From: Macrostomum lignano
Taxonomy: Eukaryota
Direction: 5' to 3'
NCBI GenBank assembly: GCA_002269645.1
Contig: NIVC01000719.1
Coordinates: forward strand, 300,020-364,019
DNA: 64,000 nt
Position numbers and translations under genes: made by a program. The notes under the pieces are model-generated. The model was not told the DNA's origin. It ran no database searches and worked only from the letters and a program-made list of their open reading frames with translations. This document shows, piece after piece, positions 17,545 to 42,055 of the stretch; position 1 is the first letter of the stretch; each line of letters begins with the position of its first letter.

Positions 17545-18495
17545 CTAGTTGCAGTTGTCAGCTGAGCACACTGAGCAGTCTCCATAGTTAGGCAAGGCGG
17601 TGAGGCTTGAGCAGCCGTCCTTGTCCAGGTAGCAGGCCCTGTAGTACTGAAAATGATTTTGGCCAATCATTTTATATTACTGCCACAAGTAGTAAGAGGT
17701 CGCAACAGGTCATGTGTTTAAACGGATTTAGACAAAACTGCAATTCGACACTGGTAGAATTCCCGTCATACCGATTTCCTGCCGCCGATGGCAACTGAGA
17801 ACCTGATGCAGTAGTCATAACCTGCCACACAGTTTACACTGGCTGCTCTGCCATCTGGCGATGCAGCGTTGGATGCTGAGTGACATCGAAGTCCAGCTGC
17901 GGGGTCTGGGCGAATCGGGGTATGTTGTGAGCTGTGACTGGGTGCTGACACTACCGTTCTGACTGTGACTGAGTGCTGTGGCTGTGACTGTGGCTGTGAC
18001 AGTGACAGTGACTGTGAATGTGACTGTGACACCGTGACTGTGACTGTGACACCGTGACTGTGACTGTGACACCGTGACTGTGACTGTGACACCGTGACTG
18101 TGACTGTGACACCGTGACTGTGACAATGCGCCTGTAAATGTTACTGTGACAGTGACAGTGACTGCGATTGTGACTATGATACTGACTGTGACTGTGACAC
18201 TGTGACTGTGACACCGTGACTGTGACAATGCGCCTGTAAATGTTACTGTGACAGTGACAGTGACTGCGACTGTGACTATGATACTGTGACTGTGACTGTG
18301 ACTGTGACTGTGACAGTGACTATGGCTGTGACAGCAGTCTCCCATGATGCAAACAATGTAAGTGACTCTTTTCATTTCACACTAACCTACAAGTATCTCT
18401 CAGAACTCAAATCATAACGCCAGATTACAAAACTCACCGATTGCATTGAAAGCTAGCATTAGCAGAATAGCAGAGCAGGCAGTTTGTCTCAGCAT
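17545..18495 (-). CDS. Secreted three-finger/Ly6(LU)-like 8-Cys protein, copy 1 (94 aa, 3 exons)
   Basis: Exons 18495-18438, 17896-17772, 17646-17545, GT-AG, phases 1 and 0. Translation MLRQTACSAILLMLAFNAI AGLRCHSASNAASPDGRAASVNCVAGYDYCIRFSVAIGGRKS YYRACYLDKDGCSSLTALPNYGDCSVCSADNCN*; same exon layout as the paralog at 40800-42055. Confidence 0.88.
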
Positions 18496-18570
18496 TCTGT
18501 GGCTCTTCTGTCTAAACTTTTCTGTCCGCGGAGAATAGCGAATAAAGAATGCCAGTTTCGCTGTCAGAAC

Positions 18571-18578
18571 CTTAAATA
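18571..18578 (-). promoter_or_regulatory. Putative TATA-like element of the three-finger gene (present in every unit)
   Basis: Minus strand TATTTAAG 76 nt upstream of the ATG; motif only, no transcript evidence. Confidence 0.4.
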
Positions 18579-18736
18579 GCTGGGGCGCTCAGCTTGAACC
18601 AACCAGTACGCCAGTACTGCATTGTGCGTGCGTGCGGCATATAGACAGAACTTCCACATCTGATGTACAACTGCAGTCAGAGGTGCAATATTGAACTCTA
18701 AAATTACTATTTACTAAAAATATTAATAGCTCAGAG

Positions 18737-18809
18737 CGACCACGCCAGGACTCGAACCTGGAAGCTTCTGATCCGTAGTCAGACGCGTTATCCATTGCGC
18801 CACGCGGCC
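18737..18809 (-). tRNA. tRNA-Arg-ACG: tRNA-Arg(ACG) copy 3, A46C variant
   Basis: Variable loop reads AGCTT instead of AGATT; otherwise canonical; T5 terminator. Confidence 0.93.
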
Positions 18810-18992
18810 CTCGAAATTTGGTAGTCCTTGAGCATTCCTTAACGATTTATGTGTTTGATCAGACGCCAATCTCTTAATGGGTACGATTTCAGTAGTAATG
18901 ATAGAGTATGTTAAATCTTTTTAGGAAAAACTAAATTTAAGAGACATTTGAAAGAGGAAATTCGAAAAGGTCATCCAAATCTGAATGCACCA

Positions 18993-19708
18993 CTGACACC
19001 TATTCCATGCCTCACTGACACCTATTCCAATGCCTCACTGACACATATTCCAATGCCTCACTGACACCTATTCCATGCCTCACTGATACCTATTCCATGC
19101 CTCACTGACACCTATTCCAATGCCTCACTGACACATATTCCAATGCCTCACTGACACCTATTCCATGCCTCACTGACACCTATTCCAATGCCTCACTGAC
19201 ACCTATTCCAATGCAGCACTGACACCTATTCCAATGCCTCACTGATACCTATTCCAATGCCTCACTGACACATATTCCAATGCCTCACTGACACCTATTC
19301 CATGCCTCACTGGCACCTATTCCAATGCCTCACTGACACCTATTCCAATGCAGCACTGACACCTATTCCAATGCCTCACTGATACCTATTCCAATGCCTC
19401 ACTGACACCTATTCCAATGCAGCACTGACACCTATTCCAATGCAGCACTGACATCTATTCCAATGCAGCACTGACATCTATTCCAATGCCTCACTGACAC
19501 CTATTCCAATGCCTCACTGACACCTATTCCAATGCCTCGCTGACACCTATTCCAATGCCTCACTGACACCTATTCCAATGCCTCACTGACACCTATTCCA
19601 ATGCAGCACTGACACCTATTCCAATGCCTTACTGACATCTATTCCAATGCAGCACTGACATCTATTCCAATGCAGCACTGACACCCATTTCAATGCAGCA
19701 CTGACACC
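18993..19708. repeat. Satellite A block 2
   Basis: 22/23-bp ctgacacctattcca(a)tgcctca units. Confidence 0.95.
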
Positions 19709-39401: not shown

Positions 39402-39487
39402 CACAGGATTTCTTGACAAATGACTATTCTGATATTTTTGTGGCCATATAAAAATACAAGTAAAATCGAAAAAAATATATCTCAGAG

Positions 39488-39560
39488 CGACCACGCCAGG
39501 ACTCGAACCTGGAATCTTCTGATCCGTAGTCAGACGCGTTATCCATTGCGCCACGCGGCC
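39488..39560 (-). tRNA. tRNA-Arg-ACG: tRNA-Arg(ACG) copy 13
   Basis: Canonical sequence with terminator. Confidence 0.97.
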
Positions 39561-39943
39561 CTCGGCATTTGGCAGTCCTTGAGCACGGATTTCTAATTTT
39601 CTTTTCAAAATCACAGCTGCTGCCAATCATGTTTGAACACGAGGCCTGCATGTGAATTTGCGAGGCTTGGCTGGGAATGTTGAAATCGGAAACGATTTCA
39701 AGAGGCTCTTAGAGAACACTCGTTTTTAAAGGCAACAACAGCATTTCACTTTTGTCTAATGTCTCTAATGTCCACCGATAACTACTTTAATTTCCACCGA
39801 CACCTACTTTATTGTCCTCTGACACCAACTATAATGTCCACTTTAGTGTCACATCTTTTACACTTGACGAGACATTAATGGTAGTTCTATTTTGTCTTAA
39901 AATGTAAAAAACATTTAAAAAATGTAAGGAAAAAAATTTTAAA

Positions 39944-40016
39944 CGACCACGCCAGGACTCGAACCTGGAATCTTCTGATCCGTAGTCAGACGCGTTATCC
40001 ATTGCGCCACGCGGCC
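39944..40016 (-). tRNA. tRNA-Arg-ACG: tRNA-Arg(ACG) copy 14
   Basis: Canonical; unique flanks; T7 terminator. Confidence 0.97.
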
Positions 40017-40799
40017 CTCGGAACTACACGAATTTTTACCTGGTACATAAATATCAAGAAACCCATTGTTTAACCTGCTGTCTGCTTTCTGTTAGGGAGG
40101 CAAATATTTATTGTTTTACTACTGCTAAGTCAGTAGCGTGTGGAAGTTCGTGGTTTCTATTTTGAAACGCATAATAAAACGCATCTCAAGCATAATAATG
40201 TCATTGGAAAGGGTCGATGTGTAATATTTTAATTAAGGGGTTATTTATATAGTATTTATAATGTTTCAACTCGCTGTTCAAACGGCAAACGCTAACATAA
40301 AATACGCAGCACTTATTAACTTTTAAAGCCATAAAACTGTACGAGCGTAAGGTTTATAATTATGTGATAAGGTAAGAAAAAAGTTAATGGAACAACAGAC
40401 CAGGTGAGATACGAACCCAGGTTGGATGAGAAATCAAATAAGATAATTAATTAGGTAAGATACATTGTAAGAACCCAGGTAAGATGGGAATTCAGATAAG
40501 ATAAGATAAGATAAGATAAGATAAGATAAGATAATCAGATAAGACAAACTAATCAGGTAAGTTAGGAACCCAGGTAAAAAGAGAAATAAGATAAATAATT
40601 AGGCGAGATAAGAAATCACGTAGCATAATTAGCAGGATGAGATAAGAAGCAATATACGATGGGCAATCAACCATAAAGCACTCTATTTAAAAGTTCCCCT
40701 CCGCAAATAACCAGCGCCAGCGACTAAAAATGTTTGTTAATTCCTCACAATTTCAAAGAGTCACGCCCAAGTTCTACTACCAATTATAGACGTCCTTGT

Positions 40800-42055
40800 T
40801 CAAAACGCGGTGCAAGCGACAGAGAAGGCTGCAGCCGACGCCAGCAGCAGTCCGGCACTAATGAGGCCTACGGCAGATTTGGTCACCTTCTTCTTATAAT
40901 CTGGCGTTGCAGTCGGTGGATCCCGCTTCAGCTGGTCGACGCCGTCACCGATGACAGCGTTGCAGTTGTCGGTGGCGCACACCTTGCAGTCCACGTAGTT
41001 GGGCAGCGCGGTCAGCCCGGCGCAGCCGTCTTGGTTGTAGCAGCCCTTGTAGTACTGCGCAATGGGAGTCATTAGATAGGCATTTGGTGGAGCTGAATCT
41101 CGCACATTGCACTGTCTATGCTTTGTATATCTGTACTCCCATGCACCTCATCAAGTGTTCCAGGCATGCCTCCAGACGCCAAGACACACCTCTAGACGGC
41201 ACTCTACAGATCTTGAAACCTTCTGGATTCTCCTGCACCCACATCTAGGGAACTCACTGTCTTCCCTCTGGAGTTCTGATAGGCATAGCTGATGCAAACC
41301 CGAAGCCCGTCTGTGCATTCGCGACTGACACCAGATTCTGGCGATGGCGCGCTAGAAGCCATGATACACTTGAGACCCTGCGCCATGCCTGCGGGGGAAG
41401 AAAAGTTAGTTGCTTAGTTACTTAGCTAGTTTGTTAGTTTGTTCGGTAGTTAGTTAGTTAGTTAGTTAGTTAGTTAGTTAGGTAGTTAGCTAGTAAGTTT
41501 GTTAGTTAGTTCGCTAATTAGTTAGGTAGTTAGCTAGTAAGTAAGTAAGTAAGTTAGTTAGTTAGTTAGTTTGTTTGTTTGTTCAGTAGTTAGTTAGTTA
41601 GTTAGTTAGATAGTTAGTTAGATAGTTAGTCAGTCAGTTAGTTAGTTAGTTAGTTAGTTAGTTAGTTAGTTAGTTAGTTAGTTAGTTAGTTAGTTAGTTA
41701 GTTAGTTAGTTAGTTAGTTAGTTAGTTAGTTAGTTAGTTAGTTAGTTAGTTAGTTAGTTAGTTAGTTAGTTAGTTAGTTAGTTAGTTAGTTAGTTAGTTA
41801 GTTAGTTAGTTAGTGAGTGAGTTAGTTAGTTAGTTAGTTAGTTAGTTAGTTAGTTAGTTAGTTAGTTAGTTGGGTAGTTTGTTAGGTAGTTAGTTCGCTA
41901 GTAAGGTAGTTCGCTAGTTAGTTAGGTAGTTAGGTAGTTAGGTAGTTAGTTCGCTAGTTAGCTAGTTACTTGGCTAGTTAGAGAACCCTGACTGCGGACT
42001 TACCGATTGCATTGGCGGCCAGAAAGCCGATAAGGATCAATGTGATGTTTTGCAT
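40800..42055 (-). CDS. Three-finger/Ly6(LU)-like protein with C-terminal hydrophobic (GPI-type) tail; 3 exons
   Basis: Exons 42055-42004, 41388-41258, 41054-40800. Translation MQNITLILIGFLAANAI GMAQGLKC..REC..RVC.. YYKGCYNQDGCAGLTALPNYVDCKVCATDNCN plus spacer plus AVGLISAGLLLASAAAFSVACTAF*. Confidence 0.88.
41405..41980. repeat. (TAGT)n microsatellite in intron 1 of the GPI-type paralog
   Basis: Long ttagttag run. Confidence 0.97.

What the first reader, a model, noticed from the sequence alone, without database searches (positions are those of the whole stretch)
17545..42055. GPI-anchored to secreted transition in a three-finger family, paralleling snake toxins
Seen: the five array genes and the single gene at 40800-42055 share a 3-exon layout, intron phases 1 and 0, an exon-1 ending NAI, the acceptor ccccgcag, 8-Cys spacing and LTALPNY.DC.VC..DNCN. 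The array genes stop right after CN, whereas the paralog continues with a spacer and hydrophobic tail. Established: LU-domain proteins are typically GPI-anchored, and secreted derivatives (three-finger toxins, SLURP1) lack the tail. Inference: loss of the anchor followed by rapid amplification of a secreted effector (defence, prey capture, mucus or seminal fluid).
Basis: partly seen in the sequence, partly recalled or inferred. Interest (0 to 1): 0.85.

Follow-up and report, generated by a model that had tools for sequence, protein, structure and literature searches.

The report
Flatworm three-finger-like gene array

Summary
Six three-exon genes lie on the minus strand: five tail-less copies (four with identical CDS, one with 3 nt changes) and one paralog with a 52-residue C-terminal extension ending in a hydrophobic tail. 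The organism is Macrostomum lignano. The array protein is GenBank PAA80125.1, a "hypothetical protein" from an RNA-seq-guided annotation that also stops right after CN.

A Ly6/uPAR three-finger fold is likely but not proven:
- Pfam QVR E=6.6e-4, below the curated cut-off; shuffled controls give nothing.
- Cysteine positions map onto four CD59 disulfides.
- One AlphaFold model reaches pLDDT 65, and its Foldseek hits are mostly three-finger proteins, none significant.

- Array and paralog split long ago (dS about 1.4), whereas copies c0-c3 are 100% identical, so amplification did not closely follow any tail loss.
- Loss versus gain of the tail cannot be decided, because no homologue was found elsewhere.
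- Each repeat unit also carries two tRNA-Arg(ACG) genes and minisatellites, so the amplification may be neutral.
- An older assembly shows one copy where this window has four.
- The shared "ccccgcag" acceptor is not at homologous positions in array and paralog.

Nothing supports a toxin role. Verdict: new member of a known kind, modest interest.

The parts
17545..18495 (-). Array gene c0. Exons 18495-18438 / 17896-17772 (17905-17772 with the GenBank acceptor) / 17646-17545. Encodes a 94-aa precursor with no tail.
21195..22145 (-). Array gene c1. Exons 22145-22088 / 21546-21422 / 21296-21195. CDS identical to c0.
24851..25963 (-). Array gene c2. Exons 25963-25906 / 25202-25078 / 24952-24851. 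CDS identical to c0. Intron 1 is 703 nt because of a longer intronic repeat.
29274..30332 (-). Array gene c3. Exons 30332-30275 / 29625-29501 / 29375-29274. CDS identical to c0.
37098..38110 (-). Array gene c4, the older copy. Exons 38110-38053 / 37475-37351 / 37199-37098. It has 3 nt differences from c0 (A31P, S73L, one synonymous); flanks are 1-3.5% diverged.
40800..42055 (-). Tail-bearing paralog. Exons 42055-42004 / 41388-41258 / 41054-40800. Encodes 145 aa. Intron 1 holds a 578-bp (AGTT)n tract.
40803..40958 (-). Part of paralog exon 3 encoding the 52-residue extension after CN: a spacer plus the hydrophobic C-terminal end. Putative GPI attachment signal with omega about S121/A122.
   Evidence: coordinates; heuristic
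14850..17544 (-). Terminal partial repeat unit with two tRNA-Arg genes and the 23-mer and 25-mer minisatellites but no LU gene. It marks the end of the array next to the PP2C gene.
17545..31711 (-). Block of four near-identical repeat units (about 3.65-4.4 kb each). Each unit holds an LU gene, two tRNA-Arg(ACG) genes, 23-mer and 25-mer minisatellites and an intronic GTCACA-type repeat. Units 1 and 2 are 99.7% identical. Units differ mainly in minisatellite length.
31711..35475 (.). 3.7-kb non-unit spacer between c3 and the c4 unit. It holds 22-mer and 39-mer minisatellites and no recognisable gene. It is also present in the older assembly.
14853..14925 (-). tRNA-Arg(ACG), the lowest-scoring copy (49.1 bits).
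15845..15917 (-). tRNA-Arg(ACG)
18737..18809 (-). tRNA-Arg(ACG), about 240 bp upstream of the c0 ATG, same orientation.
19794..19866 (-). tRNA-Arg(ACG)
22387..22459 (-). tRNA-Arg(ACG), upstream of c1.
23444..23516 (-). tRNA-Arg(ACG)
26205..26277 (-). tRNA-Arg(ACG), upstream of c2.
27874..27946 (-). tRNA-Arg(ACG)
30574..30646 (-). tRNA-Arg(ACG), upstream of c3.
31632..31704 (-). tRNA-Arg(ACG)
36137..36209 (-). tRNA-Arg(ACG)
38351..38423 (-). tRNA-Arg(ACG), upstream of c4.
39488..39560 (-). tRNA-Arg(ACG)
39944..40016 (-). tRNA-Arg(ACG), about 780 bp downstream of the paralog's stop codon.

Best explanation
This is a lineage-restricted family of small 8-cysteine proteins in the flatworm Macrostomum lignano, most likely with the Ly6/uPAR (LU, three-finger) fold.

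The two forms:
- The paralog (42055-40800) keeps the classical Ly6 layout: signal peptide, LU domain, spacer, and a hydrophobic C-terminal end encoded in exon 3. It is probably GPI-anchored to the cell surface.
- The other form ends directly after the terminal Cys-Asn. After signal-peptide cleavage before L-R-C it should be released as a 73-residue, 7.7-kDa, near-neutral soluble protein.

Timing and mechanism of amplification:
- The two forms separated long ago; synonymous sites are saturated.
- Much later, a ~3.65-kb unit multiplied in tandem. The unit holds the tail-less gene with its own TATA-type promoter, two tRNA-Arg(ACG) genes and three minisatellites.
- The likely mechanism is unequal crossing-over between the repeats. 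It gave one older copy (c4) and four identical young copies (c0-c3), raising gene dosage.

Inferred function:
- By analogy with other LU proteins, the secreted form probably acts as a diffusible ligand or modulator of a cell-surface receptor, and the anchored paralog as a cell-autonomous one.
- The divergent fingers I-II (exon 2) would carry binding specificity. The conserved exon-3 part (LTALPNY..CN) would form the scaffold.

Shown: gene models, identity levels, tail presence or absence, organism, tRNA co-amplification.
Inferred: fold, secretion, GPI anchoring, mechanism of amplification, receptor-ligand function.
For: Family and gene models:
- Six genes with the same 3-exon, phase 1/0 layout and the shared motif.

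Organism and transcript support:
- P0001 = PAA80125.1 from Macrostomum lignano matches the array protein and ends at CN+TAG.
- That annotation is RNA-seq/transcriptome guided (PMC5730564).

Fold:
- Pfam QVR (u-PAR/Ly-6-like) gives E=6.6e-4 over model positions 6-86 of 86 for the mature array protein.
- The paralog hits only QVR, Toxin_cobra-type and DUF753.
- 5 Cys-fixed and 3 full shuffles gave no hit.
- Cys positions 3/21/28/45/52/64/67/72 map onto CD59 pairs 3-26, 19-39, 45-63 and 64-69 (PMC4839075).
- AlphaFold2 with a 3-sequence alignment: pLDDT 64.9, pTM 0.54, with a beta-hairpin between Cys3 and Cys4, a short helix and a third strand.
- Foldseek's top hit is the three-finger toxin 3hh7 (prob 0.91, TM 0.49/0.54). 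About 20 of the top 27 hits are three-finger-fold proteins: toxins, Lynx2, PSCA, TEX101 and activin/BMP receptor ectodomains.
- The three-exon structure, with the signal peptide in exon 1 and the anchor signal in exon 3, is the typical Ly6 gene structure.

Topology signals:
- N-terminal hydrophobic core with (-3,-1) sites before LRC/LKC.
- The paralog has small residues at S121/A122 followed by a terminal 16-residue hydrophobic end and no cytoplasmic residues.

Timing:
- Array versus paralog: dS 1.37, dN 0.45; exon 3 dN 0.18, exon 2 dN 0.69.
- c0-c3 are 100% identical including flanks; c4 is 1-3.5% diverged.

Unit content:
- 14 tRNA-Arg(ACG) genes found by two methods; minisatellites.
Against: - Pfam score of 21.1 bits is below the gathering cut-off of 27.3.
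- PDB sequence searches are not significant.
- hhalign against an alignment of insect QVR orthologues gives 0.7% probability.
- Only one of five AlphaFold models reached pLDDT 65; the others scored 36-46. No Foldseek hit has E<=0.001.
- The C-terminal motif is CxxCxxxxCN, not the canonical adjacent CCxxxxCN.
- SignalP and NetGPI could not be run. The tail could be a transmembrane anchor.
- No expression, localisation or target data were found; supplement searches of five M. lignano papers were negative.
- The paralog has no transcript or annotation support in the collections searched.
- The older assembly shows one copy where the window has four, so copy number is uncertain.
Confidence: 0.6

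Rival explanations
1. The amplification is a neutral or tRNA-driven segmental tandem duplication. On this view the unit is essentially a tRNA-Arg(ACG)/minisatellite macro-repeat that expands and contracts by unequal crossing-over. The LU gene is a passenger, with no selection for more secreted protein.
For: - Each unit carries two intact tRNA-Arg(ACG) genes, 14 in 25 kb, and a terminal unit has the tRNAs but no LU gene.
- Three minisatellites per unit provide recombination substrates.
- The only CDS differences (c4 vs c0: 2 non-synonymous, 1 synonymous) give no signal of selection.
- Copy number differs between assemblies.
- Tandem and simple repeats make up about 15% of this genome (PMC5730564).
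Against: - Every copy keeps an intact ORF, splice sites and an identical 300-bp upstream region.
- Neutral and adaptive amplification are not mutually exclusive.
Confidence: 0.4
2. The direction is the reverse of the first reader's. The ancestral Macrostomum gene was secreted (ending at CN), and the paralog acquired its spacer and hydrophobic tail secondarily, for example by stop-codon loss and read-through into the 3' UTR.
For: - No outgroup sequences were found to polarise the change.
- No relic of a tail lies downstream of the array genes.
- The family is atypical: 8 Cys, versus 10 in other platyhelminth three-finger proteins (PMC3812095).
Against: - Across LU genes the anchored form with the tail in exon 3 is the common state, and repeated anchored-to-secreted shifts are documented (PMC4839075; PMC10421932).
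- With dS above 1, a tail relic would not be expected to survive anyway.
Confidence: 0.25
3. The five-copy array, or specifically the four identical copies c0-c3, is an assembly artefact or a haplotype/subgenome-specific copy-number variant of a single-copy gene.
For: - The Mlig_3_7 contig NIVC01000596.1 has one LU gene between the same flanks (spacer region on one side, partial unit and PP2C on the other) where the window has four.
- c0-c3 are 100% identical in genes and flanks.
- M. lignano is a neopolyploid with a highly repetitive, redundant genome (PMC10733133 listed).
Against: - The units differ in minisatellite lengths: intron 1 is 541/541/703/649 nt, and the 23-mer array has 31.7 vs 58.7 copies. 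That is expected for real distinct copies.
- Collapse of near-identical 3.65-kb repeats in the older assembly is at least as likely.
Confidence: 0.2
4. The proteins are not LU/three-finger domains but an unrelated small disulfide-rich fold that happens to end in CN.
For: - All sequence matches are below curated or significance thresholds.
- The AlphaFold model is only moderately confident and four of five models failed.
- The canonical adjacent CC is replaced by CxxC.
Against: - The only Pfam families hit are three LU/three-finger-type models, and shuffles that keep the Cys positions give nothing.
- Cys spacing, the L-x-C start, the terminal CN and the exon layout all fit.
- Foldseek hits are dominated by three-finger proteins.
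Confidence: 0.15

Closest known systems
Ly6/uPAR (LU) family: GPI-anchored members (CD59, Lynx1) and secreted members (SLURP1/2, PATE)
   Same: - Signal peptide, then a ~70-80-residue Cys-rich domain starting L-x-C and ending C-N.
- Four core disulfide positions can be mapped.
- Three-exon gene with the signal peptide in exon 1 and the anchor signal in exon 3.
- Anchored and tail-less paralogs coexist in one cluster (PMC4839075).
   Different: - 8 rather than 10 Cys; the finger-1 disulfide is absent.
- CxxCxxxxCN instead of CCxxxxCN.
- No significant sequence match to any family member.
- Function unknown.
Snake three-finger toxins (3FTx) derived from an anchored Ly6 gene
   Same: - Small (60-75 aa) secreted 8-Cys three-finger-type proteins lacking the membrane-anchoring region.
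- Multiplied in gene clusters; loss of the anchoring region is proposed as the enabling step (PMC10421932).
- Best structural match of the model is a 3FTx.
   Different: - Independent origin; 3FTx are squamate-specific.
- Here the copies are identical rather than diversified.
- No venom apparatus, expression or toxicity evidence.
- The direction of change is not established.
Platyhelminth three-finger/CD59-like proteins (SmCD59.1-7/SmLy6, Fasciola Ly6)
   Same: Flatworm LU-type proteins with a signal peptide and mostly predicted GPI anchors (PMC3812095; PMC8763315 listed).
   Different: - Those proteins have ten conserved Cys with a fixed two-residue spacing between Cys2/3 and Cys4/5; these have eight Cys without that pattern.
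- No detectable sequence similarity was found in the searches run here.
Insect Quiver/Sleepless family (Pfam PF17064 QVR)
   Same: Best-scoring Pfam model, aligned end to end (positions 6-86 of 86). An invertebrate LU family with GPI-anchored members.
   Different: - Score is below the gathering threshold (21.1 vs 27.3 bits).
- Profile-profile comparison with true QVR orthologues gives 0.7% probability. It is not a QVR orthologue.
Echinoderm three-finger proteins (Lystar5, LyAr2-5)
   Same: An invertebrate LU repertoire containing both GPI-anchored and a few predicted secreted members (PMC11595613).
   Different: Not known as a near-identical tandem array. No sequence relationship was shown here.

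Membership tests
Ly6/uPAR (LU, three-finger) domain superfamily | N-terminal secretory signal peptide | tested here: met
   Hydrophobic core (KD 2.6-3.0 over 9 residues) and (-3,-1) sites directly before LRC/LKC. This is a rule-based check only; SignalP was not available.
Ly6/uPAR (LU, three-finger) domain superfamily | At least 8 Cys in the spacing that allows the four core disulfides (CD59 3-26, 19-39, 45-63, 64-69) | tested here: met
   Mature array Cys at 3, 21, 28, 45, 52, 64, 67, 72, compared with CD59 positions in PMC4839075. 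Actual connectivity is not testable here.
Ly6/uPAR (LU, three-finger) domain superfamily | C-terminal Cys-Asn after a CCxxxxCN motif | tested here: inconclusive
   The terminal CN and the x4 spacing are present (DC.VC..DNCN). The two preceding Cys are separated by two residues instead of being adjacent.
Ly6/uPAR (LU, three-finger) domain superfamily | Match to a family profile at the curated threshold | tested here: not met
   - Array: QVR 21.1 bits against a cut-off of 27.3 (E=6.6e-4).
- Paralog: QVR 16.2, Toxin_cobra-type 15.0, DUF753 12.7 bits, all below their cut-offs.
- Shuffled controls gave no hit.
The matches are suggestive but sub-threshold.
Ly6/uPAR (LU, three-finger) domain superfamily | Three-finger beta fold | tested here: inconclusive
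   - Best AlphaFold2 model: pLDDT 64.9, pTM 0.54; the other four models scored 36-46.
- Foldseek top hit is 3hh7 (prob 0.91, TM about 0.5), and about 20 of the top 27 hits are three-finger folds, but no hit has E<=0.001.
Ly6/uPAR (LU, three-finger) domain superfamily | Typical gene structure: three coding exons, signal peptide in exon 1, domain split over exons 2-3, anchor signal in exon 3 | tested here: met
   Gene models, compared with PMC4839075.
GPI-anchored LU proteins (paralog only) | C-terminal GPI attachment signal: small omega/omega+2 residues, a short spacer, and a hydrophobic end with no cytoplasmic tail | tested here: inconclusive
   Candidates are S121 (SAV) and A122 (AVG), followed by a spacer and a 15-16-residue hydrophobic end at the very C-terminus. 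NetGPI, PredGPI and big-PI were not available. A transmembrane anchor is not excluded.
Snake three-finger toxins (3FTx) | Descent from the squamate Ly6 ancestor and expression as a venom component | not testable with these tools
   The organism is a flatworm, and 3FTx are described as unique to caenophidian snakes (PMC10421932). This can only be an analogue, not a member.
Quiver/Sleepless orthologues (PF17064) | Profile-level similarity to true QVR proteins | tested here: not met
   hhalign of A2 against a 23-species QVR alignment (A3): probability 0.7%.
Platyhelminth CD59-like/TFPD proteins | Ten conserved Cys with two-residue spacing between Cys2/3 and Cys4/5 | tested here: not met
   There are only eight Cys and no CxxC near the N-terminus, compared with PMC3812095.

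The most novel reading that the evidence does not exclude
A Macrostomum-specific, otherwise orphan three-finger-type family in which a tail-less form became an externally acting effector (defence, prey or partner manipulation, e.g. seminal fluid) and is now being amplified for dosage. That would be an independent, very young invertebrate replay of the first steps that led to snake three-finger toxins. It would also be caught together with co-amplified tRNA-Arg genes.
Probability: 0.1. Interest if true: 0.6.

Novelty: new member of a known kind. Interest (0 to 1): 0.3.

Why it matters
If the fold and topology predictions hold, this gives a transgenesis-capable flatworm a clean natural pair: an anchored LU gene and a soluble LU gene side by side. 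The soluble gene sits in a very young tandem array, which is useful for asking what changes when an LU protein leaves the membrane and how gene dosage evolves.

It also assigns a likely fold to a GenBank "hypothetical protein" and flags copy-number disagreement between M. lignano assemblies.

It does not open a long-standing question. Anchored-to-secreted shifts and tandem expansion are well documented in LU families.

Tried and rejected
- **Homologue searches.** The paralog and the family profile found only the array protein itself (P0001). Other hits were bacterial repeat proteins sharing 'GCTSLTTLP' and were rejected as spurious.
- **Look-up of spliced proteins.** It worked with P0001.
- **PDB sequence searches.** With the paralog and with the profile, only non-significant long-neurotoxin and Tse1 matches appeared.
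- **Single-sequence AlphaFold.** It failed, with pLDDT 43.
- **hhalign against real QVR orthologues.** The result was negative at 0.7%. That alignment is a narrow orthologue group, so this only rules out QVR orthology.
- **Adding QVR proteins to the AlphaFold alignment.** I decided against it, because it would bias the model toward the fold being tested.
- **Search for a tail relic or seventh copy.** tblastn of the window found none.
- **Selection among array copies.** Too few differences to say anything.
- **Expression data for Mlig009825.** Nothing in full text or in supplements of five M. lignano papers.
- **The 31.7-35.5 kb spacer.** Only short ORFs and minisatellites.

Full report
**1. 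What is there**

The motif LTALPNY.DC.VC..DNCN occurs six times, always on the minus strand. I built exon models for all six copies.

- Five array genes: c0 18495-17545, c1 22145-21195, c2 25963-24851, c3 30332-29274, c4 38110-37098.
- One paralog: 42055-40800.
- All have three exons, GT..AG introns in phases 1 and 0, and an exon 1 ending AAT GCA ATC G (..NAI).
- The array genes encode 94 aa and stop (TAG) directly after ...DNCN.
- c0-c3 have identical CDS. c4 differs at three nucleotides (A31P, S73L, one synonymous).
- The paralog encodes 145 aa. After CN it continues with a 28-residue polar spacer and a 24-residue hydrophobic end.
- tblastn with each exon finds no seventh copy and no relic of the tail downstream of any array gene.

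**2. One correction to the observation**

The octamer CCCCGCAG is present in all six genes. However, the only database relative is P0001, GenBank PAA80125.1 'hypothetical protein BOX15_Mlig009825g1, partial [Macrostomum lignano]'. It is the array protein spliced at an AG 9 nt further upstream (cccag|ACCCCGCAG), giving NAI-DPAA-GLRC.

- That acceptor lies seven codons before Cys1, exactly as in the paralog (NAI-GMAQ-GLKC). It is therefore the positionally homologous one, and the shared octamer is not at equivalent positions.
- Both acceptors keep the frame and give the same predicted mature N-terminus.
- The Mlig_3_7 annotation behind P0001 is RNA-seq and transcriptome guided (PMC5730564).
- This is indirect evidence that the gene is transcribed, spliced as modelled, and terminated at the TAG.

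**3. Organism and context**

- The window is Macrostomum lignano, a free-living neopolyploid flatworm with a very repeat-rich genome.
- Neighbouring genes, by Pfam: a PP2C phosphatase (10777-13048, +), a subtilisin/proprotein-convertase fragment (2091-2660, -) and an ML-domain/NPC2-like gene (about 44650-45410, -).
- A possible voltage-sensor phosphatase-like exon lies near 63.5 kb. It had no Pfam hit and is my reading only.

**4. Anatomy of the array**

The LU genes are part of a ~3.65-4.4-kb repeat unit. Each unit contains:

- two tRNA-Arg(ACG) genes (14 in total, by ARAGORN and Rfam), one of them about 240 bp upstream of each LU start codon;
- a 23-mer and a 25-mer minisatellite;
- a GTCACA-type repeat inside intron 1.

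Further features:

- Units 1 and 2 are 99.7% identical over their full length.
- c0-c3 are 100% identical in CDS, introns and 300-bp flanks. c4 is 1-3.5% diverged in non-coding DNA.
- Units differ mostly in minisatellite length.
- The array ends in a partial unit (14850-17544) that has the tRNAs but no LU gene.
- A 3.7-kb repeat-rich spacer (31711-35475) separates c3 from the c4 unit.
- In the older assembly contig NIVC01000596.1, the same flanks enclose a single LU gene where the window has c0-c3. The four young copies are therefore either collapsed there or vary in number between haplotypes or subgenomes.

**5. Timing**

| Comparison | dS | dN |
|---|---|---|
| Array vs paralog, whole aligned CDS | 1.37 | 0.45 |
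| Exon 3 (core scaffold, LTALPNY..CN) | about 1.2 | 0.18 |
| Exon 2 (finger I and half of finger II) | about 1.7 | 0.69 |

These are Nei-Gojobori estimates.

- dS is saturated. 15 of 43 identical residues use different codons, so the shared motif is kept by protein-level constraint, not by gene conversion.
- The tail-less and tailed forms are therefore old paralogs, while the c0-c3 amplification is extremely recent.
- 'Loss of the anchor followed by rapid amplification' joins two events that are far apart in time.
- Co-amplification of tRNA genes and minisatellites makes a neutral unequal-crossover origin a serious alternative to selection on a secreted effector.

**6. Is it a three-finger/LU domain?**

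Evidence for:

- Pfam's only hit for the mature array protein is QVR (u-PAR/Ly-6-like), E=6.6e-4, aligned over model positions 6-86 of 86.
- The paralog hits only QVR, Toxin_cobra-type and DUF753.
- Five shuffles keeping Cys positions and three full shuffles gave no hit.
- The mature protein starts L-R/K-C and ends C-N. Its Cys positions (3, 21, 28, 45, 52, 64, 67, 72) map onto CD59 disulfides 3-26, 19-39, 45-63 and 64-69. It lacks the finger-1 bridge, as short-chain toxins do (PMC4839075).
- The three-exon layout is the typical Ly6 gene structure.
- AlphaFold2 with the three family sequences gave one model at pLDDT 64.9, pTM 0.54. It shows a beta-hairpin exactly between Cys3 and Cys4, a short helix and a third strand.
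- Foldseek against the PDB put the three-finger toxin 3hh7 first (prob 0.91, TM 0.49/0.54). About 20 of the top 27 hits are three-finger-fold proteins.

Evidence against, or limits:

- The Pfam score is below the gathering threshold.
- PDB sequence searches are non-significant.
- hhalign against insect QVR orthologues is negative.
- Four of five AlphaFold models failed, and single-sequence prediction failed.
- No Foldseek E-value reaches 0.001.
- The canonical adjacent CC is CxxC here.

I put the LU fold at about 85%.

**7. Topology**

- Simple rules give an N-terminal hydrophobic core and (-3,-1) cleavage sites directly before LRC/LKC in all forms.
- The mature array protein would be 73 aa, 7.7 kDa, pI 7.7, with no N-glycosylation sequon and no retention or anchor signal. 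It is therefore predicted to be secreted.
- The paralog ends in a hydrophobic stretch with no cytoplasmic residues, preceded by small residues (S121/A122). This fits a GPI signal better than a transmembrane helix.
- No dedicated predictor was available.

**8. Comparison with known systems**

- LU families routinely contain both GPI-anchored and secreted members, often in clusters (PMC4839075).
- Repeated anchored-to-secreted shifts, including the one that founded snake three-finger toxins, are described (PMC10421932).
- Invertebrate LU repertoires with both kinds are known (PMC11595613).
- Parasitic flatworm CD59-like proteins have ten Cys in a different pattern (PMC3812095).

The Macrostomum family is thus a divergent, apparently lineage-restricted new member of a known kind. 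It is not a QVR orthologue, not a platyhelminth CD59-like protein, and only an analogue of snake toxins. Direction of change, expression site, target and any toxin-like role remain untested.

**9. Verdict**

- Novelty is modest and the interest score is 0.3.
- The most useful follow-ups are outgroup sequences from other Macrostomum species, RNA-seq mapping to this locus, and long reads to fix the copy number.

Noticed in passing
window 14853-40016 (minus strand): Fourteen tRNA-Arg(ACG) genes lie within 25 kb, two per repeat unit and all in the same orientation as the LU genes. One sits about 240 bp upstream of each LU start codon. A protein-coding gene and tRNA genes are being co-amplified as one unit.
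   Followed up: partly
window 17897-17905 and equivalents in c1-c4: Two in-frame acceptor AGs lie 9 nt apart (cag|ACCCCGCAG|CT). GenBank's RNA-guided model uses the upstream one. The choice adds or removes Asp-Pro-Ala within the signal-peptide c-region without changing the predicted mature protein.
   Followed up: partly
L001 (NIVC01000596.1:14200-25036) vs window 13034-35008: The older Mlig_3_7 assembly has a single LU gene where the window has four identical copies. This is either repeat collapse or real copy-number or subgenome difference.
   Followed up: partly
window 41404-41981: Intron 1 of the paralog is almost entirely a 578-bp (AGTT)n / (AACT)n microsatellite. Intron 1 of the array genes is instead filled with a GTCACA-type, 102-bp-period repeat of variable length (intron length 541-703 nt).
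   Followed up: no
window 43463-43747 (+): A single-exon ORF of 94 aa with an N-terminal hydrophobic signal-like region and six further Cys (MTTRLCNTLLLVAVIALAMCALQA...NCC...). It has no Pfam match. It may be another small secreted Cys-rich protein, and it lacks the LU cysteine pattern.
   Followed up: partly
window about 44650-45410 (-): An ML-domain (NPC2/Der p 2-like) gene with a signal peptide (MMKCVLIACLALASF...). The Pfam ML domain hit is E=2.8e-4 on one exon.
   Followed up: partly
window 10777-13048 (+): A PP2C phosphatase gene (Pfam E=2e-41) whose intron contains a long ~42-bp-period minisatellite (about 11840-12620). It is also the gene flanking the LU locus in the older assembly.
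   Followed up: partly
window 2091-2660 (-) and 63496-63888 (+): A subtilisin/proprotein-convertase pro-domain plus the start of its catalytic domain (Pfam S8_pro-domain 1e-11). At the other end of the window there is an ORF with an S4-like RLIRLPRLVALVRV segment followed by ...RYEDDGFDLDLCYIT, reminiscent of a voltage-sensing phosphatase. It has no Pfam hit and this reading is from memory only.
   Followed up: partly
window-wide (e.g. 442-1275, 6189-6702, 8846-9304, 47597-48166, 49867-50403, 54028-54729, 56251-57358, 60366-61763): Minisatellites of many different periods are extremely dense and create long spurious ORFs in several frames. This fits the reported ~15% tandem/simple-repeat content of the M. 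lignano genome.
   Followed up: no
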